DNA from: Styela clava
Lineage: Eukaryota
Assembly (NCBI RefSeq): GCF_964204865.1
Contig: NC_135253.1
Span: 14,322,001 to 14,386,000, forward strand
Length of the DNA: 64,000 bases
Reading direction: 5' to 3'
A program made the position numbers and the translations under genes. This document shows positions 12,601 to 60,600 of the stretch, piece after piece. The notes below the pieces were generated by a model that saw only the letters and a program-made list of their open reading frames with translations, made no database searches and had not been told where the DNA came from. Each line of letters opens with the position of its first letter. Positions within the stretch are counted from its first letter, which is position 1.

Positions 12601-15600
12601 GCTTATCCCAATAAATCAACTCAATTTGATTGAAACGATTTGATACTTTTTCCACACCAGACATGCAAGATGAAACCATATCAAAAGCAGAGGCAATGGT
12701 TTGCAACATGATTATGCTATTCTATTTTCTAGGCAACACAATTATATAATCATTTCTATCCTGGTACAACACCATTGTAAAATACTTTACATTCAAAACT
12801 CAAAAAAAAAAAACTGCAACTTACTCATTCAATAGGTAGATTGATTTTGCATCAGCAAATTGAACCATGCAGGTGTGAGAAAATGCTTTATGTTCAGTAA
12901 TGATTCGACCAAAATATTTTCTTGAAGTATTGATGTCCAATGGAGTACCTTGTCGCTGTGATGACATTCCACGAGAATACAACAAAGTAGCAACATCATT
13001 GTCATTACACCCACGAATCTGTTAAATATTAAAATTTATTAAGTCGATTTCTTGCTTTAGCAAAGGGTGGAATATCTGGATAGTTATGTATTCTAGAGAT
13101 TTAAGTTTAATGCAATTTCCACCATTTTGATAGCTCATATTGGAGAAAAATCATAATACATGCCATTTACTACATAACATTGACAATTTGTTTCAGTCAG
13201 TGGGATTCATTGGACATCACTAGTTAAATCTGTAGAATGACTGAAAAGTTATAGTCCACATCCACACATAACGCAAACTAATTGGGGAGACTCTATTTCT
13301 TTGATGCAAAATGACATTTGAAATATAATAATTTAAATTGTGATTATCTAGCGAACATAGGAGCATATTTATATGCAAGATTGAGTCTATTAGATAGTTT
13401 CGTCTCCTTAAATACGATAAACAACATTTCCTACCACGAATGTATCAACCTATATTTTGCGTTAATATCCACTAAACTTTTTGAGCCACTTTATCATTAC
13501 TACTTTCAAATTTTACATTGAAACACATTTTACAACTGGGGGTATCGAGACATCCAAAATCTGTCATTCTATCATTTGAGAAATACTCATAGAATAGAAA
13601 ATTTCGGCCACAGCTGCACAACAATCTGTTATATCTCACTGATAGTGGAAATAGCAAATAATTGGACGAAATGATAAACAAACCTCTTTGTGTTTTTCCA
13701 CAAAATCAATGGCAAGTGAATACGATTTACATGCATCTCTGTAACAATCTTTGAGAAAATAAAAAGTAGCTTTTTCCATATAAGATTCAAATTCCTTCTG
13801 AACTTCTTTTTCTTTTCTTTCTTTTTTCTCCCTCTAGAATATTAAATAATAAGAATAATAAATAGAAATAAATGAATGTAAAAAATATATATAAATTCAA
13901 ATCCATTCAATATTATTGAATTACAAGATTTGACTCTAGATTTGACAAACCATAGTAGGACATTCAAAGATTCCCCCATAATAACTAAAAAATATAGTTC
14001 TGAGTAGTTTCTAATATTCTTAGAAATAGGCCATGAAAAATTCAGAATGAACTCAAAAATTAGTCTAGCAATGCTTCACCACATAATTACCCCAACAATA
14101 GTAATACGATAGCAAGTTTATTCGTAATGCATTACAATGCATCAATGTAAATTTGAAAAATGACTCAAAAATTGTGAATCCAAATGCAAATTTTTTTGAC
14201 GTTTTGCATGTGAATAATTTCAAACAATAAGGTTTGGTTTTAGTGTCAGTTATTACCGTAATTATGGTATCAAGTATAATATCATACCGACAACAATAGC
14301 TGTCTTCTCTCTTCTTCAATCTTTTTCTTTTCTTCACTTTTTTTCTGAAAGGAATTAATTTGCTTTAAAATAACCAGTACATAATACAGGCATATGTTCA
14401 AAAGAAAAAAACATGTACAAATATTGTCTAATAATTTATTTAGAATTTCGATATATGAATATATGACAAAGTGGTTAACAATGGACGTAAGTACATTGGT
14501 ACGAAAGGTTAAAAATCCCAAATCTATGGATACAAAAAGTTGACGACTCGATGCAAACAAGTAGCAGCATAAGACCATTTTGAGGCAGGAGCGAATGCAA
14601 TGGCGTCCCTAAATACACATACATTGAAAGGGTCACGCAGGTTGATATTTTCCACTTAGTCCAACTATAACATTTCGGTCGAATCCATGCTGTACTCTGT
14701 CAGATTTAGCATATATGAAAACAGTTCATGAGCAATTTATCAATCTGCAAGTCAGTTATTGAATAAACTTAATAAAATTCTAAATTCCACACAAGCATGG
14801 GAAATGTTTCCTTTGGATGACAGATTAGCGGTTATGTTTTTTTTATTTATACTCAGACAAGCATGGCCCAAACGTAGAGTAAGAGTACAACATAACCACA
14901 AGGCATCCTTGGTAAAATCATTCAATATCAACTTTAACGCTTAGTAATAATCGGATTATTTGTAAAATGTATTTTTCACATAATACTGAGCAAGATAAAG
15001 CCAGAACCACTCCTGACTTCTGGTTTGATTATAGACTAAACACGATTGGATACGGTCTGTCGATATTATGAAAATTCATTCATAAAGTCACATTACTTAG
15101 TCACGTATAAAACATAAATCTTCAACGGGGATTCATAATAAGACATCAGCTCAACGGCACAGGTGCACACTTGTCACTTTTATTCATAACAATACGAAAC
15201 TCAACGCCTAAAAGTACTTTCCCAATTTCCGCTCATATAAGTTTTGGATTGTGGATTAACCAAGAAATTGACGGATAGCACAAAAAAAAACCGCAAAGAC
15301 GGTAAACTAAGGCAAAAGTTGCAAATGATAAAATTGTTTTTTTCTCAAAAATTTCAAGAAAAGACTGATATATCATTCGTGGTAAATTATAAGAATTCTT
15401 GTGAAATGAATGGTTATTTCCATGAATGATGTGGAAATGTCACGCCCGATATTGCCATATCCAATCGTGCGTATATGTCGACAATTCAAATCGTCCGAAA
15501 CCGGGTACAAATAGAATGAAAGAAAGAACTATCTCGGAATGGGATTACGTATTTCGGACAATTGGATTTCATTATCGCAGAAAACAAGCTTTTAGTAGTT

Positions 15601-21600: not shown

Positions 21601-24600
21601 AATTGATACCGGACTGTGCGCATGGTAATACGTATAGAGTTTACGTGATACAAGATGTAACACTTCCTTTTCCATTTGAAATTATCGACATGCATCAGTC
21701 TACTGTTATCCGCAAGAAATAAATAAAAGACATAATGTCTATTTTCAATTCGTTTAAGTTGGGGAAAGAGACCATAAATTTCCAAGGAAGCGGAAGTAAC
21801 AGAAATAATTTGTCGATTATGTCGATTGGTTAATATACAAGACCATAATGACAGGAAGTATGTATGTATGTAGTATGTTTGTTTGTCTCGCAATGATGCA
21901 CATAAAAGATGACAATATTAATGTTGGAGGCGGAATATGTGGTGTTGTGCACCATTTTGCCACACATGTCAACATTTATCCCACATTGTCCCGCCTGCCC
22001 CCTTTTAGCATACAGCCCCACTTCCCTATGCATGTCCCACCTAACCCACACTTGTCTCACTTGCTTGGTCAGAGCATAGATATGAAGTGGGATTGATGCT
22101 ATGTTCTGTGTTATGGTGGATATCCGGAATAAGATTGAGGTGTTCATATGATGTGTGATTCATACAATTGAGACAAGTGGAAAAAGTGAAATATCTTCTG
22201 AAACAACTTTCGGCTCACCACAATTTCGAGACACCAGAATACAATTGCACGAATGTGCTATGGTTTCATTACATTTGAACCCTTGACAATTGCACCTGTA
22301 TGCTATTGCACCTATGGGATTTTTTTTGTTTCACGGACAGTTAAACCCATACTAACCCTAACCCATGGGTTTTAGCACCCGCATATAGATTGAACCCGTG
22401 GATATACGCATGGGTTCAAATGTACGTGGGCTCAAATGTACGGTCACCATGTGCTATACATGCATCAATTTGGATGAATCGGAAAATACAGATGATATGA
22501 TCACCGGATCAGGCGGTTGACGTTCATTATACTCGGAGGGCGGGCAGAGTAACTGAGGTAACATGAATGTGCTGATATAGTCAAATCTGTAACAGTCAGA
22601 CAAGAATATGTTGATTAAGTAATATTCCGTCAAATGACAAGAAATGGATTTATTAAAACTTCCAATAGGCGTCCAATATTGCCAAATTGACTTTTTATCA
22701 TAACTGTCAGGTTGGGTACATTTTTAATATTCTAGTGTGCGTGCTTTCATTTTGAGAAATGAAGTCTGCGGAAAATACCAGTGTTTTTCTACGCTTCGTC
22801 AGCAATAATTGAAGATAAATTTTCATCAAGTTAACCAAACCCAAAACAAATAAACTGAATATGTGTAATGCAAAATAATCTATACAGATGAGACGAAACC
22901 TCTGCGGGAATGGCACGTTATGCAATCTGAGTTGCGTAATATATAGTCTGCCAACAAAAGAAACAAAAAAATTGAAGAACATTAATGAGAGAGATGCGCG
23001 CTGTAGGAAGGATTGTTATACAATGGGGATCTTATCTTGACAGTGTGATGCTACTTTCCATAATTAAAATTTGATTGCATCACTCAACGCGATGGCGAAT
23101 GCGCATTGAACTGGAATAGTTCCAAATTGTATTTAAACAAAGGATAACAGGAATATATTCAATTTATGCGAAGGTAACAGGGTTGATCTATATCAGGGGT
23201 CACCAAACTACAGCCCGCGGGCCGGATCCGACCGGTGGCGTCCTTTCATCCGGCCTGTAATAACACGTAAAAATGGCGAATTTTTTGCGAGGGGTGTTTC
23301 CCCGAGCATAGACTTCCTCGTTCACTTCGTAACATTGGCCAATCAGCAAGATGCAAAAAGTGACATAACAATAGACCCTTTCGCATCCGCTCAGACACTC
23401 TTGACATTGGGACATATTTTCAGTCATGGTTTCAAACAATACCTCATATTCGCGATTCTGAACGCTATTCGTTAGTTTTTGGTCGTGATTCCGAAATTTA
23501 AGAATGAATCAAATACGTCAATCATCATTTTGCCTTCTTATGAGTTTCAATTTAATTGCAGTAATGAAAATTGTCTAGAAATAGCTGTGATAAAATAGGC
23601 TTGAATTCTCTACCGGTACCGAACATTGCGAAGGATGCACTCATGGCGCGTGCTTTCGGCGAAACTGTTGCTGTCTAGGTTTGTCTTGCTAAAATGAACG
23701 TCGAACGTGCATTTACGTCAATAGTATACTAGTCACGTTAACTTTTTACTGCTTACATGCGGATATTGATGACAGCAATTGTTTTGCTAACAGCTAACCT
23801 CAGGATGGTTGTCTAGAAATCTTGTATACTTGTTTTGCTATGATGTTCTTCATCTATATTCTGCGATACTGGTATAGAATTTCATATTCAAGACTTATAT
23901 TGTTGGATAAATTGAATGGATTTCACAGCTTTTGGGAATTTATTGTATTGCACTGCCAAAAATATTCGTCCGGCCCGTTTCATCACAGTTTGAGTCATAT
24001 CTGGCCCGCGGTCAAGAAAGTTTGGTGGCCCCTGATCTATATCAATGCGTTTAAATTATATTTGAAGATCCATAATGAATCTGCTGGAATAAAAGTGCTT
24101 AAAATTAGTTTTATCGAAAATAATGACCTTCAAAAATACATTGTGGCTTATGGTTGTGAATTTGTTTCGCCATTTATGTATATTATATGCTTTGATATAA
24201 ATTATATATCTATTTATAATATAAAATGCGAAACAATTCTGTATTTCTTAGATAGACATCTATAGTATCAGGCTCTTTGAATATAAACATCCCGACACTA
24301 CATGATTGATATGATAAAATCGGTGCATAAAATTGATTTACGGGAAAAATAAAACACTTAAAATTACAAAGACTGAAATGAATGTTTATTCATGAGTCAC
24401 GTACGAAAAGGAAATGGGATGCCGAGATAACTTGGACCTGTTACTTTAGTAAACTGACATAATAAAAAATCATTTCATGAGTATTCCTGAGAACTACCAC
24501 CCAAATAAAAGGTAGCGGATCCTTTACGCAGAAATACGTACTGTGTTTCCCCTTTTTTAATCGAGATTTTAGAGCTGGACTAATATTTGTCCATTTTAAT

Positions 24601-42600: not shown

Positions 42601-45600
42601 AAAGTTTTCACCGAATTTATAAATACGGGTATATTTCTGATTAGCCGTAGTGGTATGTTATGTTACTCGTGTGCTCGACGACTATTTAACTGGTTGGAAT
42701 CGAAAAGCTTCAGAAATTGAGATAAACCATGAAGAAACAGTGAATCATATAGTATATAACAATTTCGCTGTAACTTGGTTATAAAATATTAGTCTGTAAA
42801 ACACATGGGGTGCGACGGCATATTTAACACATTCAAACAAAAGAAGCTTAAATTTTCGTCAGTCTGTGAGAAAAAACCTGGCCACCACGACTATTTGATT
42901 TGGGAAAGATAAACACTCGTGTTAGTTTGTTTACTTTTGATTGCAAACGATGTCCGAAGACAATGACCCAATTCACAGCATGTCTGTAAATTCACGATAG
43001 TTTGTGGGAATCGTCAAAGGTGATTCAATGCGTTTTACTACTAACTGGAAGTCACAAAAATAAGCAGAGTGAGAAATATTTGTTATGTGTAGAACATAGC
43101 ATGTCTTATTACAATATTTTACGATTTTACAATGTCGTATGTTTATCGGAAAATAAAATTACTAAAAGGACAAAGCATGTGGCTGTTTTGCCAGAAAAAT
43201 AGTAGCAAGGAACAGCTTCTTAGATGGTGTTGTCGCGTAATCTTCAAGAGTATGTTCTTATCAAGTGGATATGTTGTTATACTTGGAATAATAGCGTAGC
43301 TCAAGTGGCCTTAAGATCAAATTAAAATTGCTCTTTTGATAAAAAATAGATGAGAAGGTTAACCGTTATCGGTGAATAATAGTACAAAAGGCATATATAT
43401 ATAGGCAGTATATTAGGTAAATAGGAATACGATAACACCTTAATGTCGTCATCAACGCACACGTGTATGGAGGTAAATTACATGACTATGTATACGATAC
43501 TGAAATCTAATAAGTATAATTAACATGAATGAAATTAGACATTACACAACGACGTCCTTTGTATTGCACACTGATAGTAGGCCGGTTGGCGCCAATGTAT
43601 CTTTGTATTTGCCAAACCATGGTGCTGGACAAAGTATATTCTATATTTGTGCACAGGCTACCGTATATAAAGAAGACTGTTGAAAACTAATGAAAATTTC
43701 AAATATAAGACAGCAGACTATGTATTCGCAGAGGTCATGACCGACTAGTTCAATTTGTGATGGCAAAGGTTGAACGGAATCACGTTACCAAAAATTGAGA
43801 CCCATGAGACACTGTAGCTTGAATTCTGCAATACAAGTCATAGAAGTATTCAGAATAAGCCCCTGCCCTGCAGCTTATCAGGTTATTTATACTCGAATAG
43901 GGTTAAAATGTCAGCACTGTTTACGGTGGTCGTTAGGTAAGCTCATATGAGAACAAGAAAAGACAGGGTAAAAACCGACACAAAAGTAGGCAATATCGTG
44001 CGATAACGTTAGTCTGTAACTAAAAAAGAAAAAGAACGCAAGAAAGCAATCGCCATAGCTACACGCCCGAGGTTTCATCGGAAATTCAAATAATAGAGAT
44101 ACGAGCAGAGGCAAGCAACGTACGAAGAAGAGAAGATATCAACAATTACCGCAGGCAAAGTGGTTCACCTTCGCCGATTCCGACGTAATTAGGCGCGGAT
44201 TGAGCCTTGCCGTGCGTGCAGTGAAAATTTTAGATGAAAGTAGATGAATGTAAACTGTTGCATTCATTCAGAATTCCTGTCAGAAATAGTTAGTTTTTTT
44301 TTTCTGCAACTAAAATATTTTAATAAATATAAAATTGTTTTCGTTGATTTGATTTCGGTCATATTTGAAACGATGGCGATGCAATAAAATTCATGCTCTA
44401 CTTTGAAGTAGACTAGCATAAGATGATCGCAAGTTATATTCAATGAAATCAGTTTCAGTTTTTATTGATCTCAAAGGTGTAAAGGTGTTATTATTCCGTA
44501 CATTATTGCAACCTTTCTTATTATTCTCAGGTGTAAATAATAACAGTTCCAACTTAGTGCAAAATGGTGTAAATAACGAGTCAACCCTACAACTAGAAGT
44601 TGGAAATTTCAACTCGAGTGTACTTCCTAAGTTGGTATTCCGGTGACTGAGCAGTAAATGTTGATTGGTCGAGCAGAATCCCATTATATTGATCGGATTT
44701 CCGTTAAAGAACTGATAAAACCGGAATTTTAATTATCAGTAATATATTTGGGATATAAACACCATGGACGAATTGGATTACTATCTTCGAGTTGTCATTG
44801 GAAAAGATGCTGGACTTATATTTCTATGTGTGTTTGGAGCAGTTTTAAACAGCGTCATGCTGTATATGCTTTTGTCGAAAAAACAGGTACGTATTTGCGG
44901 CGTACTTCGAACGCATCCCCGGTGTTCATTTTTTCTGATTGGTAAAATATCGAAAAATATGTTTAAATTTTGTGAAAATGATTTGAAATCAATTTTGTAG
45001 CAGTTCAATTTATTGGCAGTTACAGAGTTTAACATGGCGAAATTACCGCCAAACGATACTGATAAGCATGTTGATAAGCATCCGACCAGACGTATCGAGC
45101 TGTAAGGTGAAAATCAGTTCAACGTTTTAAGACTAACAATTTATCACAGTTTGGTTTGATCATCACCAGACTAATATTAACATGAGGCGGGAATTTCGAT
45201 AAGCAGAAACTAACTAACTTTGGATCAGCTAAAATGTATGAAAGAAATACAGATATGAAGTTTGGAGCAAAAATAAGGATAGATTGGGATAATTCAGAAA
45301 ACAAACGTTAATCCGCGAACCGCAAAACGATACGTTAATCCGAAAAACATGCTACGCATCATCGTAAGTCGTCATCAAATGTGGATTTTTGCAATACCTT
45401 CGAAGGAAGCTATAAGTAAGAAAAACAATAACAGTTCGAACATAAAATACATTTACGACTCGGTGACTATATAAATAGGCCACACACGAATAATACAAGA
45501 ATTAATATAAATTGTTGCTGTAAGCTGTATACTTGCTCAAATGTGTTATCAAAACGACAAAAGACAAGTAGAATAATTTTTTGACAACCAAACTAAAGTT

Positions 45601-48600
45601 CGTCATTAAAATTGAATAACAAGATGATATGGGCCAGTTGCCTAAAGTTATATATACATGAATTATAACGATCCCAAGAATCAAAATTTAAAACAATTTT
45701 TCAACATCAGAACTTTAAAAATTCCTAGTTACCAAATTCGTGGCATCTGAAAGTGATAATGAGGTACAATTTGGTCAAATTAAGATAATTCGTTAAAAGA
45801 GAAATACCCGCAATTCTGCTAAATATTTAAACATTTTTGAGATTACCACTGGCAAGCTAGCAGTAATGACCTCGGGCATCATTTTGGGAATTATAATAAT
45901 AATAATATCAAGATTATATACAGAATGAAAGTAGGTTCAAAACTACGGATGGCATGAATTAAGACAGCGTTATTGTGATTGTTTTAATTTAACTGGAATT
46001 AGAAGCAAATGAAGCAAAATCTATGTCCTGCCAATCTTTTGATGTCACTCCTATATGTCAAGTAAATGTCAAGTTTCAAATCCACGAATACCATAAATAG
46101 TCGCGGTATCGGGAGATTATTTTATCAATATATATCAATATTTTGATTTTTAATCAACGAAAAATTTCTATTTCGATTTGGTTTGGACATAATTAGACGA
46201 GATTATTTTACGTATAGCATAACAGCTTCAACAGCACATCATTTACCTGCCAGAAGGCATGAACGGTACGGCCCCATGATCTTTCGAACGTCATGCTCGG
46301 AGTTGTTTAACGGACAAGATAATCTTATTAACGCAAATTAGGGTATGGTGCGTAAAATACCTCTCATACCCTATGTACATTTTATTACGAATGAAAACAT
46401 ATAAATTAAACAGCAAACTAGACATAAAATTTGACACTAAAACCATCTTAAAAAGTATGGATTGTATACGGAGAGCTTTGGTCACTTTATCAAGATAGTG
46501 CGAATCCGACAATTGTGGAAATATACACATGAGGTCCGAGTAAAAAGTTTGGGCACATGTTGAAACAACTACCACTGGTGCATGACATTTAAGGTGGGAC
46601 GATGAAAACAGGGGAGTACATTGTACTGTACATTATATATCTGCTCTCCAGCTGAGAAGTGATTAGCAACCAGTCAAAATATGTGTTCTGTTGCTATCTA
46701 GATCAAACAATTTGCCTACTTTCAAAATCGTTCGTCAATTCGGTAACTGACGTAATGCATTTTTGGGCAGCTTCAAAATTAATTATCCTGTTAATTTAAT
46801 TTATCTCGGAGGAAAAATTTATGCTATTACTCTCAATGACAATAAACAATCGAAATATGCATATTTCCGTATGAATTTTGAAAAGAGATTTAAAGTGGCA
46901 AAAATATTTCCAGAAAAATTCCACATTTATAGACTCATTGTAATTGCTGGCTTATAAACCGATTAGAAAAACTGTCATACAAAGAAAAATAATTTTACGT
47001 TGCTGTTTATCTATTATCTTTAATCAATAATGTCGTCAAAATCTAAAGGGTTTATACAAAATAATTGCTAAGATTATCAATCAAATTTAAGTAAGAATGA
47101 CATTATAACGCCCACACAAAACCTTTTTGATACCCAACAACTGATCAATGAAATTCCACGCATTAGTACAAGAAAATGTTTTCCCATGATTTCAATTTTA
47201 TGATAAAATATAATCTGAAGGCGTCATGGGCGGGCTTTACGTAGACGGGCTGTCTGAAAGTGCCTCCATACAAAGTCAAAATGCGCGACCAAATTCAACT
47301 ATAGGGACACAAAAGAATATCAGCTGGAAGTTCATTATCCCGTAACACAATAGAATTCATTAAATGTTATGAAATCACAAGGTCGCGGGATTATTTCTTA
47401 AGACTTTGTCGGTCCGTATCAGATCAAACACAAACTGCCATTGTGTTGACAAAGGTTGAAAATGTCACACGAAATATTATTTTGCATCTGACGCCAAAAG
47501 ACAAAAATGTAAATATAAATATTATCCGAGATTTGATATTAAATTTTGATGAAAGATGGTGGTGTTATAACACGAAAAGAGAACAGAAAAAAGTTGTTCG
47601 AGAACTGCGATCTTGCTATATTTCTGTAGTCAATTTGTATAGTTTGGTCCACAAGTTTTAATCAACAATAAAATTGAGAAATATATTATAGTTTAACTAG
47701 AATTAACATAACCAGCATAATAAGACTCTGGATACTGAATGCAAATTGCGTCACCACAACAACTACCTCATATTACACAACACTATTTATTAAGTAGATT
47801 AACCGATTAGGTATTTTTCAAATATTGTTATTGTTTAAAAGTTTTTGTTATCTTGACGTCATTATGATGTCATAACCCGCTGTTGTTTGTCTCGAATTAG
47901 TTTCCTAACCATTCTCCATTCTCGAAGATCCGCTTGCCTGAAGCGTTTTTTATGTTTATTGATTTTCTGCGAACAGCAGCAAATTTCAAAAAATATATTC
48001 GGTCGTTTTTATAAGCAACATAGAGTGAATGACATCCCAAACATTTTGAGAATGGAATCACAAGTTTAAATATATTCTATACACTAAATTTACTGTGAGC
48101 AATATTTTGTTCATAATGTACCATGTCGTTGGAGACAGGTGATAAAATATTCGAAAGGAAATTAGCAAATATCATATTAATGTCTTGGAAAAAGTCGTTA
48201 GAAATGAATATACTACTAATTCAGAAATAAAAATTCTTGGTTTACATAGAGTATCAGGCTTCTCCATAATATATCAATCACATATTCGAAACCCATACAC
48301 TATGCGACCCTTAAATTCCATCCAATGATAAAAGGATGAGTTTTAATCTTGTTATAATTGATCACCATCGGAATGCACAACAGGAAAGTAATAATACTGC
48401 TTCCACTCCATTTGGGTAATTCGTTTTAGTTCGATCGCAATATTGAGATGATTTCTAATATAATGTGTCCATTAAGTCTGATGTTTGTCAAGAAGAACAA
48501 TCTAATAAAGAAAAGCTGAAAACATGCGACGGTCTGCGTTTCGTGGAATCGCAATTTCATAGGAAAATGAATTGATGACGTATTACACAACACTGGTGTT

Positions 48601-51600
48601 TCCATGTTTCGGCATAAAAACAAACTACTTTTAGGAAACCGGATGACAGAAAACATCCAAGAAAAACGATCAATTGTAATAAATCAGTATTGGTATTGAA
48701 TATAACAGAAGAATTGGATTTTATCATTATACCCAACAGGTATATATATTCAGTACATCAACTCATACTAATTCCCAACTTTAATTGCAGATACGATCGT
48801 CGGTTCACACGGTATATATGGTACAAATTGCATTGACGGATCTCTTGGTGTGCGCAGTATGGTTGGTCCTAACAAGCGTCATCATACACAACCTACTACT
48901 AGAGACACGCGATTCTCCATCTTATGGTAAGTAATATCAATCTCAACAACACTGATATGTTTATTTGCGTTGCGTTTACGTTTGGCCTTTTGGTACCAAG
49001 AAGTGTTTACGTCAGGAATACAATGCGATTGTTTGATAACCACACCAAAACATTTATATAGCAATACTGTGTGATATTTTCCATCAAAAGATTCAATAGG
49101 GGCACACCCATGAACGCACAAAAATAAGATAACGATTCTGAAGCTTTGTGTGATAAGAATTTGCTAGAGTCTTACAGAGCAGATGGCGCATTTATTTCTG
49201 GCGTGGACAAATCAACAAACGTGATGTAACCATCGATATCAAATGTCAGCTAGTAATATAATAAATATTAGCAATACATGATAAACTATTGAGCAACGGG
49301 GCCTTTAGCAATTGTTACTCACACATTGGGCAAAAAAGAATCGTGGGAAACTCAAGGCAAAACATAACCAAAATGCGCAACTGCTTTATTTAGAGAAAGT
49401 TTTGCATACAAGAATGATATATCATACAAATAAAACAATGAAATTGGGGAAAGCTAACGAGGTGTATCTATGCGTAACGGCATTTGAAATACCGATATAG
49501 TGCACGTATTCGTAAGGGGCATATAGTGATCATTATTTTTAATTTTCGAGTAAATGAAGAAATGAGATTTGCAATGGATCAACGCAGTGAATTTTTTTTA
49601 TTTTTGAAATAACGATCGCTTACCCTTACTCTATTTGCAATTGGGGATGGGTTACAACCCCATAAGTTTCCATCCTGCTATCATATGATATCGGAGATTA
49701 CGATTCCGCGATAAAAGTTAAAAATCGGTTTTAATATTTACCGAGACAGAGGCCATTTTGGCATTGGTCAATAGTTTGTGCAAACAGTACCCGTGCGTGC
49801 AGAATACGTTGGTCGAAGATAGCTTTACTTTCTCTTCCTCACGCTATCAAAGCAGGCTTTGTCACGCAGGTAGAAAGCATGTCAAAACTTTAGCGAAACC
49901 AGGTTTCAAAATAAAATATCGAATCACGGGTGAACGAGAAGGTGAGCTACATCACGTGCATTCGACGATCAGATAAAAGGGGGTGGAGTTTGTTGCGAAC
50001 TTGGTTTAAACACCATAAAATCGAATAATTATTTTACAATTAATCACATACACCAATCATTCAGGAATAAAATAGGTAAAAATGATTGTACTCCCATTAA
50101 TTTCTCTTTCAACTTAATACTACAAAACAAGCCGTAAGTTATTGGGACGACCAAGAACGTGTTGGGGTACATTCCAATCGTGGTATATGGGTCATGTGTA
50201 CATCAACCTTTTTGTAATATAATGCCAAATCCACTCGTGGGAACACACTTCGAAAAAACCAGAAAAAGGTGATAGGAACGAACCAAATACATCGTCCAAG
50301 GTGGCAAATTTCTCATTACAAAATAGTTCACTTTGACGTAAAAAAGCTTTACATTGTGCAATTCACAACCTCTGTGTTCATCGAAATATCAAACCTTCGT
50401 GAGCCAAATCAAATTTGTAGAATATCACATTGGTTTGAATTTTGTACACCATGGTAAAGCCAGCCTGGAAATCTCAAGAACTAAGTTTGAGGTGTTCTTT
50501 TACAAAACTAAGGCCCCAGAAGTCGAGTTAATCTCTTGCGCGCGGCTAAAAAGAGATTCTTGATGTGATTTGTTTACATACGCACAAAGAGCTTTTATCT
50601 ACGCCTAACCCGTCACGCGATTGTCGATGAATTGGGAAGATGAGATAGGTTTACGATTACGTGGCTAAAATGGACAGTATCTCCCTTTCGGCGCACGCTA
50701 ACCTTGTATGTATGTCTTTTTGTGATGGTTGTGGCCAGCTGAAAAAGTTACAGACTATTAATACTATTTTTTCTATAAGAAAATCAGTTTTAAAAATCGA
50801 CTTTCCGGAAGACTATTTGACACATGCATATTGTTAAGAAAAAATAAAACGGGAAACGGAGGAGGCGGTTTTCCATAACCCTGTATTTAGCCGTAAGTCT
50901 TGATGGCAATGAAAAATTTATGAAAATATCAATCATTATTTAAAAATACCATGTGTGATATATAGGCGTATTGGATCATTCGATCGAGATTCGTATAAAA
51001 TATAAACTCTTATTATAAGGATAATAATGTTAGGTCGGGCAGAACAGCCCAAATCCGATAACGCTGGTCTACGCTTCGGCGAGCAAGACGACATAATACT
51101 TTAATTTCTAGTTTAGAGCCGAGTGTAGTGAATCACCTTGTCGACACGCGGAATGCATAAACATATATGAATCCTGAGATGGTACAAAAAAAGATAACAG
51201 TTTCATAGGTGATCGTGTTTTTGAAGAATGAAAAATCTAAAACCTAATCATAATGTTGCCCGAGGCTATTTGAAGCAAATAAATAGTTTTTTTTCATGTC
51301 AACTTCAAACTCAAATCTATTTGGCGCTTATAACTTTGCATTACGTGCGCCAAATATATTAAATGGCAACATGCTTGGGAGGATAATTAAACCATTTATC
51401 TGATAATAGTGTTAGTGACGTGGTTTGTCAACCCAGCGCGAAGAAGATGAATTGAGATTATCCCTAGAGATTCGCCGGGTGGTATAGTAATAATAATAAA
51501 AACAATATGCAACGACGACTATTTGCGGCATACCTGCATCCTGGTTTTAATCTAGTAGAATGTTAACTAACAATTTCTAGGAAAAACTTATCAACTCGCA

Positions 51601-54600
51601 ATAGGCTACGGATTATGGCCTATAACCTACCGAGTACGTACACAGTAACTAAGTACAAGATATAAAGGGGCAAGGGATCTACTGAAATGGTGATTCCACC
51701 AACAATACGAAAAATTCATTTTTCACACTCGCAATTGTAAAGAAAAAGAAAACTGTAAACCAGTAGTAGTTTGTGAAAAACTACTGAATAAAAATCAAGT
51801 ATATGAACACAATGATTTATCTAAGGCTTAGCCCCGAAAGTTTTAGTACCGTTAGACGCTGAACCACATACAGTCGTATGCAATGGTCACACAGTTAATA
51901 AATACGAAACTTCTGCTCTCTGATGGCTAACAAAAGTGAAGACAATAACTATATACATATAAAGTATATAAATTAACGTGACAATTCTACTTTTAGAACC
52001 GAACCACACGGAAGAAGTGGAAACAAATGAATCCTCTGAATACGCCACAATCACTGAGGATCCTCAGGCTGGTCCAATTCAATATCGGACATGGAGAATA
52101 ATGTATACATGGTACAATTTTCACTATTACACGAACATATTCCTGTTGGCAAGCATGAGCGTGGAGCGTTGCGCAGCTGTCTGGAAGTCAATGAGATGTC
52201 AAAGATATCAGTACAACGTAAGTCATATACTCATTAATAAAAGATTTGTGGATGTGATTTCGTCATCATCTCCACAACAACGACCCACTATTTCGACTCC
52301 GTTCCTTGACTTGTTCGTTTATGATGAAATCCTTCGAACAGATTATCACCCAGGGATGAACAATTCAAAATAGGTTGGTTCATCTCGTATTCAAAATGGT
52401 GTACACCGCAAAATGAAAAATAAATTTTTTCTGCCGTGTGTTCCTGGTGCAGTGATTCATATCTCAAAATCACCAATTTTGACTTAGCGGATTTGGGTAT
52501 CAGATTTCAAGGTAAAAAAACGGTGTCAAGTTTCCTTGTATGACCTAGTTGTTTAGCAGATATATCTCAGAATGATTTAACCTCAAATTTAGCTAACCAC
52601 TGCGGTTAGCTGCGTTTTGACATTATTGCGATTGGCATTCATTTTGGCTCCTCAAGATAATGATTTTGGCTATAGCAGATATATCTCAGAATGATTTAAC
52701 CTCAAATTTAGCTAACTACTGCGGTTAGCTGCGTTTTGACATTATTGCGATTGGCATTCATTTTGGCACCTCAAGATAATGATTTTGGCTAATTACTGAA
52801 TGAAATGGCCCCGACACATACTGGGATCTACAAAAAGCCAGTATAATATTCAAACACAGTATTCATTTTACGAAGAATAATTTCAATTATAGCACCAATA
52901 TAATTTATTCTAAACATTGACATATAGCATATGTGAAATTGTAGTTGTTATCCAAGAAAATGCAATTGTTAGAATTATGATTTATCATTTCGATTTTAAA
53001 CAGAGAAAAATCATCATCGGCGTCAGTATTTTAATGTGGATTCTGGCGTTTGTTTTTGTACTACCAAATTTGATTGATCCTGATTTGATGGTAAGCGACA
53101 GTGACTCTCCGAGTAGCGTAAGTCGAACGATCAAGTCAGAAGAAATTCCTTCAGTAAGTCCCCAGGAATGGGACGAAAAAACTTCAGATGCACTACAGCA
53201 AGTTTTTCGCGATCGCGCTTTAAAGCACAACGAATTGATCGGAGTACCGAGAAGGTTAGTTCACACATTACTTTCATTACAAGATAACTTACGTTGCTAT
53301 TCCATTCCTAGTAAATGTACTTTACTTGGGGAGATTAAAATCGAACTGTACCCTTAATATCAATTCACATTTTCTTATTTTTATTTCAGTGGAAAGATCA
53401 AAGTTGACGAAATCGGCACAGGTAATTTTATTACTGTTACTAGTTAATCATATTAAATTGAGAGAAATAAATAATCTATGAATATATTTCTCGAGTAAAA
53501 AAGGAGTTATGTAGCAGCGGATTAAGCTGTTCGCCGCTCGGCATCAACGACTAATCAGAATCAATTTTTCAGTAAATCCAATCCTTGTCCAGTGTTTGAG
53601 GTCACTAACTAAATTAAAAACTAACAAAATAATTTTTTGCCCGATACAGACCCTTTGGAGAGACCTTTTGATGCTGAAGTGAAAATATACAAGGCAGATT
53701 TGGAAACACTTTATGAATGTTACACTCTGATGCTACATGCGTACAACAATAACAGAGACTATGTACGTGATCACGGAGCAATAACGATCGAAGGTTGTCT
53801 GACAAGCATAGTGGGAATTATGCATGCCTACTCCGCGGAGTTCAGAAACGCATCAGCAAATAGGGGAGACGATGGGCCAATCCTTGATTATTCAAGTGAG
53901 TAACAAACATAGCGTACTGCATAACTAAATCAAACGAATTCAGCTATGTCAATATACTTGTGTCACTTAATGAAAAATATGACGCAAATTTCAAACCAAA
54001 TTCAACGCATTTGACACAATTATTTTGATTCATATCCATCTGTCGATTGTAATCGAGAATTAACATGGAAATTCCATTTCCAGCTGACTACTATCAACCA
54101 TTTAATGACCTTTACGAAAATTATGGCACTGATCCATACGATGAAATGGGCAACAGGGAACCACCACTAATCCCCGGAGACGACTCGATGATTAAACCAG
54201 AAATATATAACAACGAAACTGGAGTTCTGGTGAGTGATATTATATATGGCTGGTTGTCAAGACGTGACAATATCGTACCAATTATATAAAATAAAAAGTA
54301 TTATAATTGCATTTATAATATTCGGCATTGCGTCATTACATTACCGAAACCAAATTGAACAACTGGCTTGCAAAAGCAATAGTGAGAAATTAAGTAACAA
54401 GATTATTCTATCTTGTCCACAGGAAGCAGTAGAAAAGCACTTTTATCAAGAGCTATTGGCTGACGCTGTCAAGACTCTATTGGAACATCATCACAATGCA
54501 AGCCAGAATGAAGCCTGCGATCCAAATTTGTCAGACGCGGCAAGAGTATACGTTCTTGTCGTAAATTTGGTGCTGGGTTTCTTTGTTCCATTCTCCATCA

Positions 54601-57600
54601 TCGTTTTCAGTTATGTCTCTATTGCATATATGATAGGAAAGCGAGCACGCAGTCGAATGAATCCCGGCATTAGTGAAACCTCTACAACACATTTCGCGCA
54701 CAACTACCTCCAAAACCAATCGACCACAAACATCCCACTGGGACCGATTAATATGAGAGAAAAGCATTCCCGCACACGAAGAGATTCAATGGGACGTCGC
54801 ATGTCTGACTTTATGAGATACGTTGTTTTACGAAAACCACAAGGTGGTGCAGACAATCGTACGTATTGGACTGAAAGCGATCGCGGAGAGACACCTTCTG
54901 GAAGTATGCACAAATCGCCATATTCCGCTTCTTCCAGGCCGTACGAAGACTCGAGCAGTGCAAACGGTAAATCTGACGGCTTCAGTCCATCCGGGAAGTT
55001 GTCCGCAAAAACGCCAGAAGAAACCAAATCTTCGTCTTCGTCGCCTGAAGACGATCCATTATACGACGAAGAACTTCAAGAAGCTATAAGGCAATTGAGA
55101 TCAGTACAAATGCGGGGCACTGCCGGAAATGACACAAACACAAAAGTGAATCCGAGGATCAAAAAATATTCTTTTTGTTTTGATGCAACTAACGAAAATA
55201 TACCTCAGACGATCGAAGAACATCCCTATGAAATGGAAGAAAATGATGACGACGAAAGCTTTCTCACTACGAGTAACAGATCGAGCGCCAACGAAGTTTT
55301 GCAATCAGGGGCAACCAATCACGCTTCACTGTTATTAATGCAGCGTAACCCCAGGCGGGAAAGTGGAGGATCCTACGGGAGCTCAATGGATAGTATGGCT
55401 ACTGATCAAACGTCTTTGCACACCAGTCTTCATGATAAGCGTTATTCTGCAGCGACAACAATGTCTGCGCTTACGCCACCCACACCTATTGAGCCGAGCA
55501 ACCCGAATGCAAATGCATTTTTCCCACCTGATGAAAAGTTACCATACAATCGATCACAAAGTGCCGAATCAGGGTATCCATTATTGGGAGATAGAACAGA
55601 TGGACATCACTCTGGGGACCAACGATCTCCAAGACCCAACAAACCCGGCTCGCAACTCAACGACATAAAATTAAAATTATATCGAAACTCACTAAGAAAA
55701 CAAGGAGATGATACAGATATCGGAGCGCTACTTTCAAAAGAAAATGACGGTCATTCTTCACCTGATATAAGCAAAACTGACCAAGGTTAGTTGTAAAACA
55801 TCGATGATCGCCTTTTAGAGTTCATATTATTGTATAGGGCAAAAAGTGTTTGGACTCGTTGTCGAGCGGAAAGCACTTTTATCACCGGTGGGATGTTGAG
55901 GAAAATCTCAGTGCTCATTTGTTACGATTTTACAAACATTTTTTCGACAATACATAAAAATATTTGTTTTCTTTTCGCCACAGCCTCTACCTCATCAACT
56001 GTTACTAAACCTACAGCGCGTGAGCGATATTCTTATCCGAGAATGACCAGAAGTAAGTCTGCTCCAGGAGACCATATTAATTCTGTGAAACATGGAAAGA
56101 GATCAGGCGATGATCATGGACAAAGTAGCATATCACAGTATCCTAAATACCACAGGCAAAATTCGTCAACGTCGACAGTATACTTTCAGCGGGGTCGAAC
56201 TTATTCTACAACATCAAGAGGTAGTGTCGGAGGTAGGCATATTAGAATCAACATTGTTTTGCTTTTTTACAATAACAACAACTCATATTTCTAATGAAAA
56301 TGACACATTTATTCTAATGATAATGACACATTTTTCCAGGTACCAGTATTTTGCACAAAACCATGGCACGAAAAAATGCAGAACGTCATCTTCGGGTTTC
56401 TCGCACTGTACTCGCCTACGTCATCGTTTTTGCCATTTGCTGGCTGCCTCAGCGTATCACTTACCTTCTCTACGTCATAGAGGTAAGAGATTCAAGATTA
56501 AATTTGAAATAAATATCTTACAGAGCCACTATAACCAAGCGCTATGGTAAAGTAACAATTACCAGTAAGAAAACGGTACTTTTTTTTTGGAAGTTCTCTG
56601 ATTATATAATTTATTTTGCAGGCATTAATGGGAGCTACAGACGATATTTGCATCAAGCTAATATCGGGGACCAGATTGCTGAGTTTCATAAGCGTGCTTC
56701 TCAACCCTGCGGTATACATCATGACACAACGGGATATACGAGCTTATATTCGTAATAGTTATTGCGTGACTAAACTGCGTCACTGGTACACAAAGTGCAC
56801 ACGCAAACGACACGTCAGAGCGGAGTACAACGCAGCTAGAAGTCGTGATAATGAAGAAACCACCGATCGAAAACATGACATTGAACTTCAGATTAGACAT
56901 GACCAGGAAATAGAGAAAGAATTATCAAGTAATCGTCAAACAAATGGTGCTCGGCCAAATTTCCGCGTGGCGAGTCCACAACGTATGTCCAGCCCACAGC
57001 GACCTGCAATACATGCGAGGAAAAACCAAAGTGGTACAACTCATGAAACATTTGCACCGACAACTGCAATTTTGCGACGTGGTGCCACAACGATTGATGA
57101 GATGAAAGAAGAGGAAGAAGCTGCGGAAGAAAGCCTCGAAAAGGAAATGAAAAGAATCGCAGCGGAAGAGGAAAATTGCCGCAAAGATGATATAAATAAA
57201 AACTGGTTGGAATCCTCAGAGGACGATATTATATCTGCAAAAAATACTTCAGGCAGTGGGAATAAAACATCAAGTTCTAGCTCAAAATCAGAAAACTTTG
57301 AAGAATTTTGGATGCGTTGGTTGAAAAGTGGGGGAGCTGAACTTTTGTCACCAGCCAATGGAAATTTATCAAGCACTGACACCCCAAGTAGAATAGACCC
57401 TAGTCTTGCAGAACTGGATGACATTGTACAAACAAAAATACCAAATGGCACAAATAATGAAATAAGTGAAACGATGATATTGAAATAGCAAAAACAATGC
57501 AATCTACAAGTAAGAAGTGAAATTATCCCCTGACCATATTTGGGTTCAAAAAATAGGTACGTCAGCTATGCTTCAAAACCCAATCTATATTTACGAACAA

Positions 57601-60600
57601 CCGAAGGTGTATGTTCCGCATTTTCATCTTGACAATGCTATGTTTTTGCTGCTATGGGTTTACCTGTCAGGTACGAACCAGTTCCATTTGACTAATCACT
57701 AATTCCTTTCAGAACTTTTTTTTAATATCGAGTTCAATCGATTTCTGACTGGAAAATATACTCATCAATAACGCTAAAATTATTTGTTTCATCATTGTAA
57801 GCCACCGTTTTGTCCACTGTGCAATTGCAAAACATAGCTTTATCTGTTTTGCTTTTCAACATCTTAATTATTGTATTTTTTATTATTATCAACTGCCTTG
57901 TTTTGCTCTACATGACTAAGGATTTTGTTCTTGTTCAATCAGTGAAATATATTTTGTTGTCCAACTTTCTGTCAAGCAACATCAAGCGCAATAAACTAAC
58001 TGATATATTTGGACAATACTTGGTGTGTTTTTCATGAAGTCAGTGGGATCGGGATGGGGATTGTTGACAAGTTAATTAAGGAAAGTGACATATATTACTT
58101 CATATTTTGGGAATGATTTTAAAAGTAAAAACCAAATCGCTACACCCAATGAGTGAGCTAAACAACAATTCGACCAACCATAACAAAGATAATACAACAA
58201 TGAATTTATTCTAGTTAGTTTTAACTAGGTTGATAACTTCACTAGTAACTGTATAGCAGATTGATATGCTAATGATAAGTCAGTTTTAAGCAGAATACAA
58301 GCATATATTAGATAGGCTATACAAGTTTGTGTTTGTGGAAAAATGCTCAACTTCGTTCAAATGGTAACATGATTTTCCGAGATCTGATGTATAACCTTTC
58401 CTTAGGGGTTTTGCATCTCCATTTCAATGAGTAAATTTGTGTTAGATTTGTTTCAGATTGTGTTACATACATTACAGCAGATTTTGTGAACATTGAGATA
58501 AATTTCTTAGAGTATGCCATTGAGAGATAAAGCATAGTAGTGTGCATACCGAAGAGTTTCAAGTCGAAAAGCTGATGCCAGGAGAATAAATGAACTACGG
58601 AATAACGAGACAGCAGCATTCAGCTTTCTCTATAGTATTGATAATGATCCTAATATGTTCTACATGCCCGGATGTTCTTTATCAAATTCACCAAATAAAG
58701 AGTAGCAAATTTACCAAATAAAAACTACCAGCAATACATTAGTTTTGAAGCTATGTTATTCTCAACTGCCTCATGTTGTCAGTTGTCACATGGCCTATCA
58801 CAATGTCATTTTACGGCCTTATTTGGATGCATGAGATACAATCTTAAATCAATGTGCATGGGAAAAAGAATTTAATCCCATGTCTAGCGCTAGCTCCTAC
58901 TGACTCTAGTTTAGCATTACTGAATAATAAGAAATGACTCACAGTGTCTGCAATAACAGGACCTGTAATATGTATGAATAAAAAATAAGAATATTTTGAA
59001 CCCAAATTGAAGATCAGCTTAAATCAGAGCCTGAATCAACCTTAATTAAAGAAGAAAAGATTAAGTTGTAAGTTGTACATGAAGTGCATCATATGAAAAT
59101 TGCTTCAACTAAAGTGAAATATCAACATTTTTGAGCGTTTATGGCCTTTCATTGAAAAAGCATGAAAAATGAAAGCTGAAACAAATTTTGACTTACATTC
59201 CTCAAATTCATCATCTGACACCAAGACTGGAACATCCTAAAATAGTTAGAACAAAAATAATCATCCAATATTAATATAGTCTGAAATCAGTAGATAGAAT
59301 TTGGATTAAACAAAATTTGAAATTAATGCTACATTAAAAAGATTGATTCAAAATTATTTATTTTTCATAAAATTTGCTATTTTGTAGTTAATTTATAATT
59401 CATGTTAAACTTTATTGGACACCCTACTAAATTGGACTACTGGATTATTTTGGTAATATTTTGACGTGATTAGTCTTGTTGTTATTGCTGAAGAGATTGT
59501 TATTGTGAAAAAATCGCTTTTATTCGCAACTAATAGACCAATTGATTATGAATACTTTGATTTTTTTTTCATTTCTCGCCGTGTCTCATGAGAACAGACA
59601 TTTCACCAAAAATGTTGCTATTTTTTTTTAATTACGGAAACACTTGTTATTCCTAGGTATTGCTTTCCCTCCTGTCAACATATTAATTAAAAGCTTACTG
59701 TATTTTATTTCTGATATTTCACTAGAAACTATATTAGATATATTTTTGTGCTTAAAATAATTGATATAAACAATTTCATGCTTTCACTATATTTAGGGAC
59801 CCAAAATTAACACTCAGCGACTATTTTGTAAATGACAGTTTGAAACCTACATCTTCATCTGCTTCTTTTTGAAAAGGCTTCCTTTTCTTTTTACCCTTCT
59901 TTTTTGGTTTACTGAACTTCTCTTTTCGGATTTCACTTCTATTCACTTCCATGCCGACTCCTTTGTCATGAGTTTCTAAAAAAATTGATAGTAGAAAAAG
60001 TAAAAAACATGAAAGAGGTATTGTCAATCAACAAATAAGAAAATTGATAAAGAAATGATCCTAGCTATAATGCATAAGATATTGATGCACAAAATTATTG
60101 CACGAAAATTAGATTTGCGGCTTTGCGCAATAGAATTTCTTTTTTAGCATCATCATGGAATAGAAGATGTAAACATTTGTCAGCCATGTCTTTCTCCAAA
60201 AGCTATAAAATGCTATGGGAAGTAATTGAATTAGCTAACTAATTCAATATTATACTAGCACATACTGGACAAGGAGGCATTGTCCAATAACCGCACAGCT
60301 TGCCTCGCTCAAGTGTAAACATGAAATTGTATTTCACACACAGTTTTCTTCACCCTATAGTAATGCTTTAGGACAAAGGATAAGATATCATTTTTATCCC
60401 AGGGGAGAGGGAAGCTTATAAGACAGCGTAATGATATGACGCACCAAGACTTATCACCACAATTGGTCACCAATCCATGTCAGGTATGTGATTATTTAGC
60501 CAGTTATTTATTCTTTTCAGATGCATGGACTTGTGGTGAAGAAAGCCATAACCGACCAGCTGTAACGTGAACCTTTATGTGGTAGTTAGAGTTAGCGATC

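What the first reader, a model, noticed from the sequence alone, without database searches (positions are those of the whole stretch)
14345..58942. One TTC3-like gene split by a ~44.6 kb intron that contains an antisense nested GPCR
Seen: the TPR exons at the right end and the exons at the left end are both on the minus strand. They join in phase (..CPVIADT | KKSEEKKK..) and the other introns of this gene are only ~0.1-1.4 kb. Established: TTC3 has N-terminal TPRs followed by a second TPR block, a Cys/His domain and a coiled coil, which is the order seen here. Inference: this is a single transcription unit whose one giant intron holds a 12.7 kb opposite-strand GPCR gene plus ~30 kb upstream of it. 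Transcriptional interference or mutually exclusive expression is possible, and automated annotation could split TTC3 into two models.
Basis: partly seen in the sequence, partly recalled or inferred. Interest (0 to 1): 0.75.

Follow-up and report, generated by a model that had tools for sequence, protein, structure and literature searches.

The report
One gene, giant intron, nested receptor
The two minus-strand exon groups are one sea-squirt TTC3-type ubiquitin-ligase gene whose 44.6-kb intron holds an opposite-strand receptor gene; this is real but already in the public annotation and ordinary for this genome.

Summary
The window is Styela clava (G000:C4:14322001-14386000). The splice from 58943 to 14344 on the minus strand is canonical GT..AG, phase 0, and 44,598 nt long.

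Spliced contigs from two runs of two separate studies (X1, X5) run through the right-hand exons to 58943. They then continue with 29-30 letters that equal window 14316-14344, a word found once in the window. A DNA run (X10) shows none of the splices.

RefSeq protein XP_039249643 (1650 aa, first named "E3 ubiquitin-protein ligase TTC3-like") already contains ...DEFEECPVIADT|KKSEEKKK.... So public annotation did not split the gene. A limpet homologue aligns in one collinear piece across the junction.

The gene is the only TTC3/DZIP3-domain locus found in the assembly. Its coding matches span about 73.7 kb, past both window ends. Its other introns are about 0.13-1.7 kb.

The intron holds a plus-strand rhodopsin-type receptor gene (44764-57488, poly(A) signal at 57990). 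Contigs of both genes occur in the same two runs, so they are not mutually exclusive at sample level.

The S. clava genome paper states that genes there tend to have one large intron, and this scan noted two other antisense nestings in this genome. Interference, internal promoters and conservation of the nesting remain untested. Verdict: confirmed, already known, low interest.

The parts
14345..58942 (-). Giant intron of the TTC3-like gene: 44,598 nt, GT..AG, phase 0
   Evidence: Sequence read. Loose ends at 58943 in X1 and X5 equal window 14316-14344. The junction is present in RefSeq protein P0001.
58943..58962 (-). 20-nt microexon encoding (C)PVIADT, the last exon before the giant intron
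   Evidence: Acceptor CAG and donor GTGAGT read. Depth in bin 58800-58999 equals 18 letters of the main contig in X1 and X5, and the loose end sits at 58943. Residues 429-434 of P0001. The joint 58962/59195 is not itself listed in table 5.
59195..59235 (-). Exon DVPVLVSDDEFEE(C)
   Evidence: Contig piece of X5 record 15, and joint 59235->59850 in X1 and X5. tblastn at 100% identity.
59850..59975 (-). Lys-rich linker exon
   Evidence: Contig pieces and joints in X1 and X5; tblastn.
60809..61018 (-). TPR exon (second and third repeats of the HOP-TPR1-like block)
   Evidence: Contig pieces and joints; tblastn 98.6%. P0001 residues 253-360 match STIP1/HOP TPR1 with E 2.9e-21.
61436..61595 (-). TPR exon (first repeat)
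   Evidence: Contig pieces and joints. Pfam TPR_2 E 2.7e-4 on the ORF, below the gathering score.
62447..62645 (-). Upstream helical exon (residues about 184-250)
   Evidence: Contig pieces and joint 61595->62447; tblastn 98.5%.
63706..63795 (-). Further upstream exon (residues about 161-190; ends approximate). The gene continues beyond the window's right end.
   Evidence: tblastn. The loose end at 62645 'behind' in X1 and X5 reads, by my own hand translation of its reverse complement, KQNELMKVVV, which is in P0001. Exons for residues 1-163 lie at C4:14386935-14389477.
14288..14344 (-). First exon after the giant intron: KKSEEKKKIEEERRQLLLS
   Evidence: tblastn 100%; sequence; loose-end letters of X1 and X5.
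12326..13845 (-). Three exons of the second helical/TPR-like block (13681-13845, 12824-13021, 12326-12412; ends approximate)
   Evidence: tblastn of P0001; aligned to the limpet protein. No Pfam family.
9982..11548 (-). Three exons of the Cys/His TTC3_DZIP3 domain (11378-11548, 10849-about 10980, 9982-10080)
   Evidence: Pfam PF19179 profile positions 2-51, 50-84 and 85-114 on three successive ORFs; 110.3 bits on P0001.
5511..5723 (-). Exon of the TTC3-like winged helix-turn-helix domain
   Evidence: Pfam PF24812 E 2.3e-12; tblastn.
286..1975 (-). Coiled-coil / TTC3 helical-domain exons (1865-1975, 1153-1368, 286-456). The gene continues beyond the window's left end to the RING finger.
   Evidence: tblastn 100%. 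Pfam PF24525 on P0001 residues 1147-1375. Remaining exons down to C4:14315778.
44764..57488 (+). Coding span of the nested rhodopsin-type receptor gene (multi-exon)
   Evidence: ORFs. Pfam 7tm_1 fragments: E 2.5e-5 (ORF 54234-55790, profile 131-190) and E 2.5e-6 (ORF 56327-56509, profile 191-228). Motifs CWLP and NPAVY read by eye. Long contigs of X5 (4475 nt) and X8 (4047 nt) cover its last exon.
57489..58014 (+). Receptor 3' untranslated end; AATAAA at 57990-57995
   Evidence: Contigs of X1, X5 and X8 stop at 57987, 57963 and 58014. Sequence.
23184..24044 (.). Dispersed repeat of about 860 bp inside the intron
   Evidence: Matches of 76-84% identity at many places on many contigs of the same genome; 4983 first-look candidates for the 20-kb query as a whole, 39 scored.

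Best explanation
This is one minus-strand gene of the sea squirt Styela clava. It encodes a 1650-residue RING-H2 ubiquitin ligase of the TTC3/DZIP3 family, and it is the only locus with that family's signature domain found in the assembly.

Its coding matches span about 73.7 kb in roughly 36 pieces and run past both ends of the window. Between a 20-nt microexon (58943-58962) and the exon 14288-14344 lies one canonical GT..AG, phase-0 intron of 44,598 nt. That is about 26 times longer than the next largest gap between its matched exons.

This intron is removed from the mature RNA, which is shown directly. Inside it, on the opposite strand, sits a complete multi-exon rhodopsin-type receptor gene with its own poly(A) signal, ending about 930 nt short of the microexon. 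About 30 kb of non-coding DNA with dispersed repeats lies upstream of the receptor.

Contigs of both genes are found in the same samples. That the long intron delays completion of the ligase transcript, or that head-on transcription of the two genes interferes, is inference only.
For: Junction in RNA:
- Contigs of X1 (1406 nt) and X5 (5459 nt), from two studies, carry four CT..AC joints, which read GT..AG on the minus strand. The joints are 59235/59850, 59975/60809, 61018/61436 and 61595/62447.
- Both contigs reach 58943 and run on with 29 and 30 letters.
- The 29 letters equal window 14316-14344, and that word is unique in the window.
- DNA run X10 covers the introns and shows none of these joints.
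- The X5 contig goes on for about 4.15 kb past 58943 by my count, which is about enough for the rest of the coding sequence.

Gene model:
- P0001 = XP_039249643.2 (S. clava, 1650 aa) contains the junction.
- It maps in order on the minus strand on both sides of the intron at 97-100% identity in most exon cores.

Single locus, no intronless copy:
- All 28 of 28 scored matches of P0001 in the genome lie at C4:14315778-14389477.
- PF19179 matches only this locus: 2 matches, with all 6 candidates scored.

Ancestral architecture:
- The limpet protein P0008 aligns 148-774 to its 128-735 in one piece, E 7e-48. It has the same Pfam domains.

Domains of P0001 over Pfam cut-offs:
- TTC3_DZIP3_dom 110.3 bits
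- wHTH_TTC3 71.3 bits
- TTC3 helical 41.1 bits
- zf-RING_2 43 bits

Context:
Against: - The runs are only guessed to be RNA by the tool. I infer RNA from the splices.
- Contigs cannot show strand, transcript ends or expression levels.
- The joint between the microexon and exon 59195-59235 is not listed as a joint. It rests on depth arithmetic, the place of the loose end and P0001.
- The X5 contig differs from the window at the 30th loose letter (14315).
- The third RNA-guess run (X8) shows receptor contigs but no contig on the ligase exons of the laid stretch.
- Only 6 kb of the locus could be laid, so the interior of the intron (14345-56999) was not checked against reads for misassembly.
- The close relative P0002 (Logan contig, 1220 aa) starts at the exon after the first post-intron exon and lacks the whole N-terminal part. 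This could mean a truncated contig or a second promoter.
- Only 3 proteins were found, and only one of them is outside tunicates.
Confidence: 0.93

Rival explanations
1. There are two separate genes: a small TPR gene at 59-64 kb and a TTC3-like gene starting near 14.4 kb. The apparent join would come from chimeric contigs or an over-merged gene model.
For: P0002, a transcript-derived protein of a relative, begins at the exon homologous to 13681-13845 and has no N-terminal TPR part. Run X8 shows no contig on the right-hand exons.
Against: Contigs from two studies both cross the exact GT..AG junction. The exon 14288-14344 has an acceptor and no start codon. The limpet homologue has both parts in one protein in the same order. 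No poly(A)-type contig end is seen after 58943 in X1 or X5.
Confidence: 0.02
2. The gene is single, but the 44.6-kb size or the content of the intron is an assembly artefact. For example, the receptor block could be misplaced.
For: Only 57000-62999 was laid against a DNA run. The rest of the interval was not checked.
Against: The window has no N. DNA contigs of X10 tile 57000-62999 with overlaps, across the receptor's 3' end and the microexon. The receptor's exons lie in order on one strand. The RefSeq protein comes from a 25.4-Mb contig. Large single introns are a described feature of this genome.
Confidence: 0.03
3. Alongside the full-length transcript, the giant intron or the small intron after it holds a second promoter or first exon. 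This would give an N-terminally shortened ligase without the HOP-like TPR block. This reading is not exclusive of the main one.
For: P0002 starts with Met directly at the exon boundary corresponding to 13845. Its contig is 3888 nt for a 1220-aa product, which leaves little untranslated sequence.
Against: There is no evidence from S. clava itself. 
Confidence: 0.12

Closest known systems
RefSeq model XP_039249643 (LOC120327250, Styela clava; version 1 named 'E3 ubiquitin-protein ligase TTC3-like')
   Same: It is this very gene. It holds the junction CPVIADT|KKSEEKKK and maps exon by exon on both sides of the intron.
   Different: Nothing of substance. The mapping shows 97-100% identity in most exon cores, and the lower figures come from matches running past exon ends.
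TTC3/DZIP3 family of RING E3 ubiquitin ligases (Pfam PF19179, PF24812, PF24525; vertebrate TTC3 and DZIP3)
   Same: All three family-specific Pfam domains plus a C-terminal RING-H2 are over their cut-offs and in the family's order. An N-terminal TPR block is present. The alignment with a limpet member is collinear.
   Different: It is the only locus with this domain found in the S. clava assembly. Whether it corresponds to TTC3, to DZIP3 or to both was not resolved, because no vertebrate sequence was in hand.
Genes nested antisense in long introns of host genes (textbook cases recalled, not from a call: OMG/EVI2A/EVI2B in NF1, F8A in F8). In this genome, the scan's notes s1-825784 and s1-809843.
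   Same: A complete gene with its own 3' end lies on the opposite strand inside a single intron of a larger gene.
   Different: No functional coupling between host and nested gene has been shown here.
The 'one large intron per gene' pattern described for Styela clava (PMC7540406, section 3.1.3, passages read)
   Same: One intron of 44.6 kb stands among introns of 0.13-1.7 kb.
   Different: In the passages I read, the paper does not mention nested genes ('nested' occurs 0 times). Its supplementary tables and figures were not seen.

Membership tests
TTC3/DZIP3 E3 ubiquitin ligase family | TTC3_DZIP3 Cys/His domain (PF19179) over the curated cut-off | tested here: met
   110.3 bits against a cut-off of 26.9 on P0001. 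Split over three window exons with profile positions 2-51, 50-84 and 85-114.
TTC3/DZIP3 E3 ubiquitin ligase family | TTC3-like winged helix (PF24812) and TTC3 helical domain (PF24525) | tested here: met
   71.3 and 41.1 bits against cut-offs of 27. The window exon 5568-5741 gives E 2.3e-12.
TTC3/DZIP3 E3 ubiquitin ligase family | C-terminal RING-H2 finger | tested here: met
   zf-RING_2 43 bits against 27.3 at residues 1583-1624. Matches to solved RING-H2 domains. The exon lies outside the window at C4:14315778-14315921.
TTC3/DZIP3 E3 ubiquitin ligase family | N-terminal TPR block on the same polypeptide | tested here: met
   Residues 253-360 match HOP/STIP1 TPR1 with E 2.9e-21. They are joined to the rest in RNA contigs and in the limpet homologue. 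The Pfam TPR models alone stay below their cut-offs on single exons.
TTC3/DZIP3 E3 ubiquitin ligase family | Ubiquitin-ligase activity | not testable with these tools
   Needs a biochemical assay.
Vertebrate TTC3 specifically (as against DZIP3) | Orthology to TTC3 rather than DZIP3 in a gene tree | not tested
   No vertebrate TTC3 or DZIP3 sequence was returned. The single locus in S. clava is compatible with a gene that predates the vertebrate pair; that is an inference.
Rhodopsin-type (class A) G-protein-coupled receptor | 7tm_1 (PF00001) over the curated cut-off | tested here: inconclusive
   There are two collinear exon fragments: 24.3 bits (profile 131-190) and 27.6 bits (profile 191-228), each under the cut-off of 30.5. 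The other exon ORFs tested gave no 7tm_1 match. The exons were not joined.
Rhodopsin-type (class A) G-protein-coupled receptor | Seven hydrophobic segments with the usual motifs (motif names recalled, not from a call) | tested here: met
   Read by eye. Hydrophobic segments lie in ORFs at 44743, 48785, 51972, 52914, 54234, 56327 and 56610. The motifs seen are LTD in the second, ERC at the end of the third, CWLP in the sixth and NPAVY in the seventh.
Nested (intronic, antisense) gene pair | The nested gene's coding span and 3' end lie wholly inside one intron of the host, on the other strand | tested here: met
   Receptor ORFs at 44764-57488 (+), with contig ends at 57963-58014, lie inside the intron 14345-58942 (-). 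The receptor's 5' end was not mapped.

The most novel reading that the evidence does not exclude
The giant intron is more than passive. It would carry a second promoter that gives an N-terminally shortened ligase lacking the HOP-like TPR block, as hinted by the relative's transcript P0002, which starts at the second exon after the giant intron. Head-on transcription of the receptor gene would then help decide which ligase form, or how much of it, a cell makes.
Probability: 0.08. Interest if true: 0.4.

Novelty: already known. Interest (0 to 1): 0.14.

Why it matters
It matters little beyond good bookkeeping. The locus is one more example of two features already described or noted for this genome: one very long intron per gene, and antisense genes nested in such introns. 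It could serve as a handy test locus for host and nested gene interplay in a compact chordate genome, but nothing here shows such interplay.

Tried and rejected
1. Two-gene reading. I rejected it on the contig junctions, the RefSeq model and the limpet alignment.

2. Retrocopy as the source of the spliced contigs. I rejected it because all 28 of 28 scored genome matches of P0001 lie exon by exon at this locus, and DNA run X10 has no such joints.

3. More genes in the left 30 kb of the intron. The ten longest ORFs (100-154 aa) between 19.5 and 42 kb gave 0 Pfam families at E <= 0.01. No tRNA was found in the window. Only 5 short tandem-repeat rows were found. This is a limited test, because small exons would be missed.

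4. Repeat content of the intron. One family of about 860 bp at about 23184-24044, and short pieces of 70-150 bp at about 35370-35500, 39730-39805 and 41020-41170, are repeated in the genome. The tool scores only the best candidates, so no repeat fraction can be given.

5. Recursive-splice consensus in the window. There were 0 matches against 0.02 expected, so there is no lead.

6. The loose end at 61594 in X1 and X5. Its 30 letters are neither in the window with up to 3 mismatches nor in the genome with up to 2 mismatches. It is left unexplained.

7. Conservation of the nesting in other tunicates.

8. Papers.
- 'TTC3' + 'Styela': 0 papers.
- 'nested genes' + 'intron' + 'ascidian': 2 papers, seen as listing only, neither on this locus.
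- Of PMC7540406 I read the passages returned only. Its supplements (Table S10, Figure S1) are closed and may hold the intron statistics.


Full report
**What is in the sequence**

The window has no N and is AT-rich, with GC of 0.31-0.42. On the minus strand an exon ends ...GCAGACACT at 58943 and is followed by GTGAGT. A TTTCAG acceptor precedes AAAAAAAGTGAAGAA... starting at 14344.

The gap 14345-58942 is 44,598 nt and in phase 0. The exon ending at 58943 is a 20-nt microexon (58943-58962). The coordinates and the reading frame of the observation are correct.

**Whose gene it is**

I searched my own exon translations one at a time and left the joined step out.
- Three successive minus-strand ORFs (11351-11581, 10834-10980, 9763-10089) match Pfam TTC3_DZIP3_dom at profile positions 2-51, 50-84 and 85-114.
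- ORF 5568-5741 matches the TTC3-like winged helix with E 2.3e-12.
- ORF 61437-61601 gives weak TPR matches below the cut-offs.

A search with the single exon 11351-11581 against 1.84 billion representatives returned 6 proteins. The best, P0001, is 1650 aa and is RefSeq XP_039249643.2 of Styela clava. Version 1 was named 'E3 ubiquitin-protein ligase TTC3-like'.

tblastn of P0001 on the window gives 25 pieces, all on the minus strand and in order. Residues 161-428 map at 63795-59195 and residues 435-1283 at 14344-286. The microexon is too short to be reported by tblastn.

In the whole assembly the window is G000:C4:14322001-14386000. All 28 of 28 scored matches of P0001 lie at C4:14315778-14389477. 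The coding span is therefore about 73.7 kb and runs past both window ends, and there is no intronless copy among the scored matches. Pfam PF19179 matches only this locus in the genome: 2 matches, with 6 of 6 candidates scored.

**RNA evidence**

The look-up of sequencing runs listed nine runs guessed to be RNA, from three studies, and four DNA-sized runs. I laid X1, X5, X8 and the DNA-sized X10 on window 57000-62999.

- In X1 (contig of 1406 nt) and X5 (contig of 5459 nt), one contig each carries four joints. These are 59235/59850, 59975/60809, 61018/61436 and 61595/62447. All have CT..AC ends on the + strand, which read GT..AG on the minus strand.
- X10 covers the same introns as continuous DNA and shows none of these joints. 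I therefore take X1 and X5 to be RNA, although the tool calls that a guess.
- Both contigs reach 58943 and go on with letters that do not fit the stretch: 29 letters in X1, and 30 shown of 255 or more in X5.
- The 29 letters are identical to window 14316-14344 on the + strand. That word occurs once in the window.
- The 30th letter of X5 differs from the window at 14315. This is probably a polymorphism.
- By my count from the pieces listed, the X5 contig continues about 4.15 kb past 58943. That is enough for the remaining 1216 codons plus an untranslated end.

Points against, or short of proof:
- The joint between the microexon and exon 59195-59235 is not listed in table 5. I infer it from the depth in bin 58800-58999 (18 letters of each contig), from the place of the loose end, and from P0001.
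- X8 has no contig on the ligase exons of this stretch.
- Contigs show neither strand, nor transcript ends, nor expression levels.

**One gene in other animals**

Searching residues 180-720 of P0001 (by id, as returned) found 3 proteins: P0001 itself, P0002 and P0008.

P0008 is a 1959-aa protein of the limpet Patella vulgata. It aligns with residues 148-774 of P0001 in one collinear piece (E 7e-48) that crosses residue 434/435. That piece includes the conserved DD(V/L)P.LVSD motif just before the junction, and a 7-residue gap in the limpet sequence near the position of the microexon. P0008 has the same Pfam families.

The two halves therefore belonged to one protein long before tunicates.

P0002 comes from a Logan contig of 3888 nt from an unnamed relative. 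It is 73% identical and 1220 aa long, and it begins with Met at the exon corresponding to 13845. It lacks the whole N-terminal part. This may be a truncated contig or a second promoter.

**Domain order of P0001**

- An N-terminal helical part.
- A HOP-TPR1-like TPR block at 253-360, with E 2.9e-21 to STIP1.
- A Lys-rich linker.
- A second helical block with no Pfam family.
- TTC3_DZIP3_dom at 602-715.
- wHTH_TTC3 at 867-976.
- The TTC3 helical domain at 1147-1375.
- RING-H2 at 1583-1624.

**The intron and what it holds**

Introns measured directly by contig joints are 417-851 nt. Gaps between protein matches elsewhere in the gene are about 0.13-1.7 kb (approximate). The 44.6-kb intron is thus about 26 times the next largest.

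On the + strand inside it, ORFs from 44764 to 57488 carry seven hydrophobic segments, with the motifs LTD, ERC, CWLP and NPAVY (read by eye). Two exon fragments match Pfam 7tm_1 collinearly, with E 2.5e-5 at profile 131-190 and E 2.5e-6 at profile 191-228. Each is below the curated cut-off, and the other exon ORFs tested gave no 7tm_1 match.

Contigs of X1, X5 and X8 cover the receptor's last exon and stop at 57963-58014, just after an AATAAA at 57990-57995. That is about 930 nt short of the microexon. The receptor's 5' end was not mapped.

For the remaining 30 kb (14.4-44.7 kb):
- The ten longest ORFs gave no Pfam family.
- No tRNA was found.
- A repeat of about 860 bp at about 23184-24044 has many copies of 76-84% identity across the genome.
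- Several short dispersed pieces lie between 35 and 41 kb.

**How it most likely works**

Shown: the host gene is transcribed through the receptor gene on the opposite strand, and the 44.6-kb intron is removed at canonical sites. Contigs of both genes are present in the same runs X1 and X5, so the two are not mutually exclusive at the level of a sample.

Inferred only:
- At usual elongation rates (recalled, not from a call), the intron adds many minutes to each transcript. That could keep the ligase from being made zygotically in fast early cleavage cycles.
- Head-on transcription could lower the output of one or both genes.

A search for a strong recursive-splice consensus found none: 0 matches against 0.02 expected.

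**Comparison with what is known**

The gene model with this junction is public (XP_039249643).

The S. clava genome paper (PMC7540406; passages of section 3.1.3 read) says three things:
- The species has more genes with introns over 10 kb than Ciona.
- Intron elongation within a gene is not homogeneous.

Its supplementary tables and figures were not open to me.

This scan has already noted two other antisense nestings in giant introns of this genome: s1-825784 (an FGF gene in FAM227B) and s1-809843 (receptor genes in ASCC3). It has also noted the receptor of this window (s1-825925). I did not test those notes beyond the receptor's class.

No paper holding both 'TTC3' and 'Styela' was found. 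Two papers holding 'nested genes', 'intron' and 'ascidian' were seen as a listing only and are not on this locus.

**Verdict**

- Observation: confirmed.
- Interpretation: supported. The exceptions are that annotation did not split the gene, and that sample-level mutual exclusion is not seen.
- Novelty: already known.
- Interest: low.

Noticed in passing
window 58943-58962: The exon upstream of the 44.6-kb intron is a 20-nt microexon. In the alignment with the limpet homologue, a 7-residue gap falls at about its position, so it may be specific to the tunicate lineage.
   Followed up: partly
window 61594 (loose end in runs X1 and X5): A second contig in both runs fits a few dozen letters above 61594 and then runs on for 255 or more unlike letters. 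Its first 30 letters are found neither in the window nor in the genome with up to 2 mismatches. This is unexplained. It could be another haplotype, a word that spans a splice, or a contig of something else.
   Followed up: partly
window 60388-60700 and 62000-62200: Intronic repeats. Many contigs of all four runs end loosely here, and summed DNA contig depth rises to 34 and 56 against about 12 elsewhere.
   Followed up: no
window about 23184-24044: A dispersed repeat of about 860 bp with many copies of 76-84% identity on many contigs. It coincides with a local GC rise. No Pfam family was found in the overlapping ORF 23822-24265.
   Followed up: partly
window about 39730-39805: A piece of about 70 nt resembles units that stand in tandem-like rows about 88 nt apart on contig C6 near 23.33 and 23.90 Mb. 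ARAGORN finds no tRNA in the window.
   Followed up: no
window 52554-52791: A perfect-looking tandem duplication of a 119-nt unit (2 copies, 98% matches) lies inside an intron of the receptor gene.
   Followed up: no
P0002 (Logan contig of an unnamed relative): A 1220-aa orthologue, 73% identical, starts with Met exactly at the exon boundary matching window 13845 and lacks the N-terminal 454 residues. This may be an alternative first exon or a truncated contig.
   Followed up: no
window 14315: The X5 contig has a different letter from the window at the 30th base of the exon after the giant intron. It would change Glu to Asp. This is a likely polymorphism.
   Followed up: no
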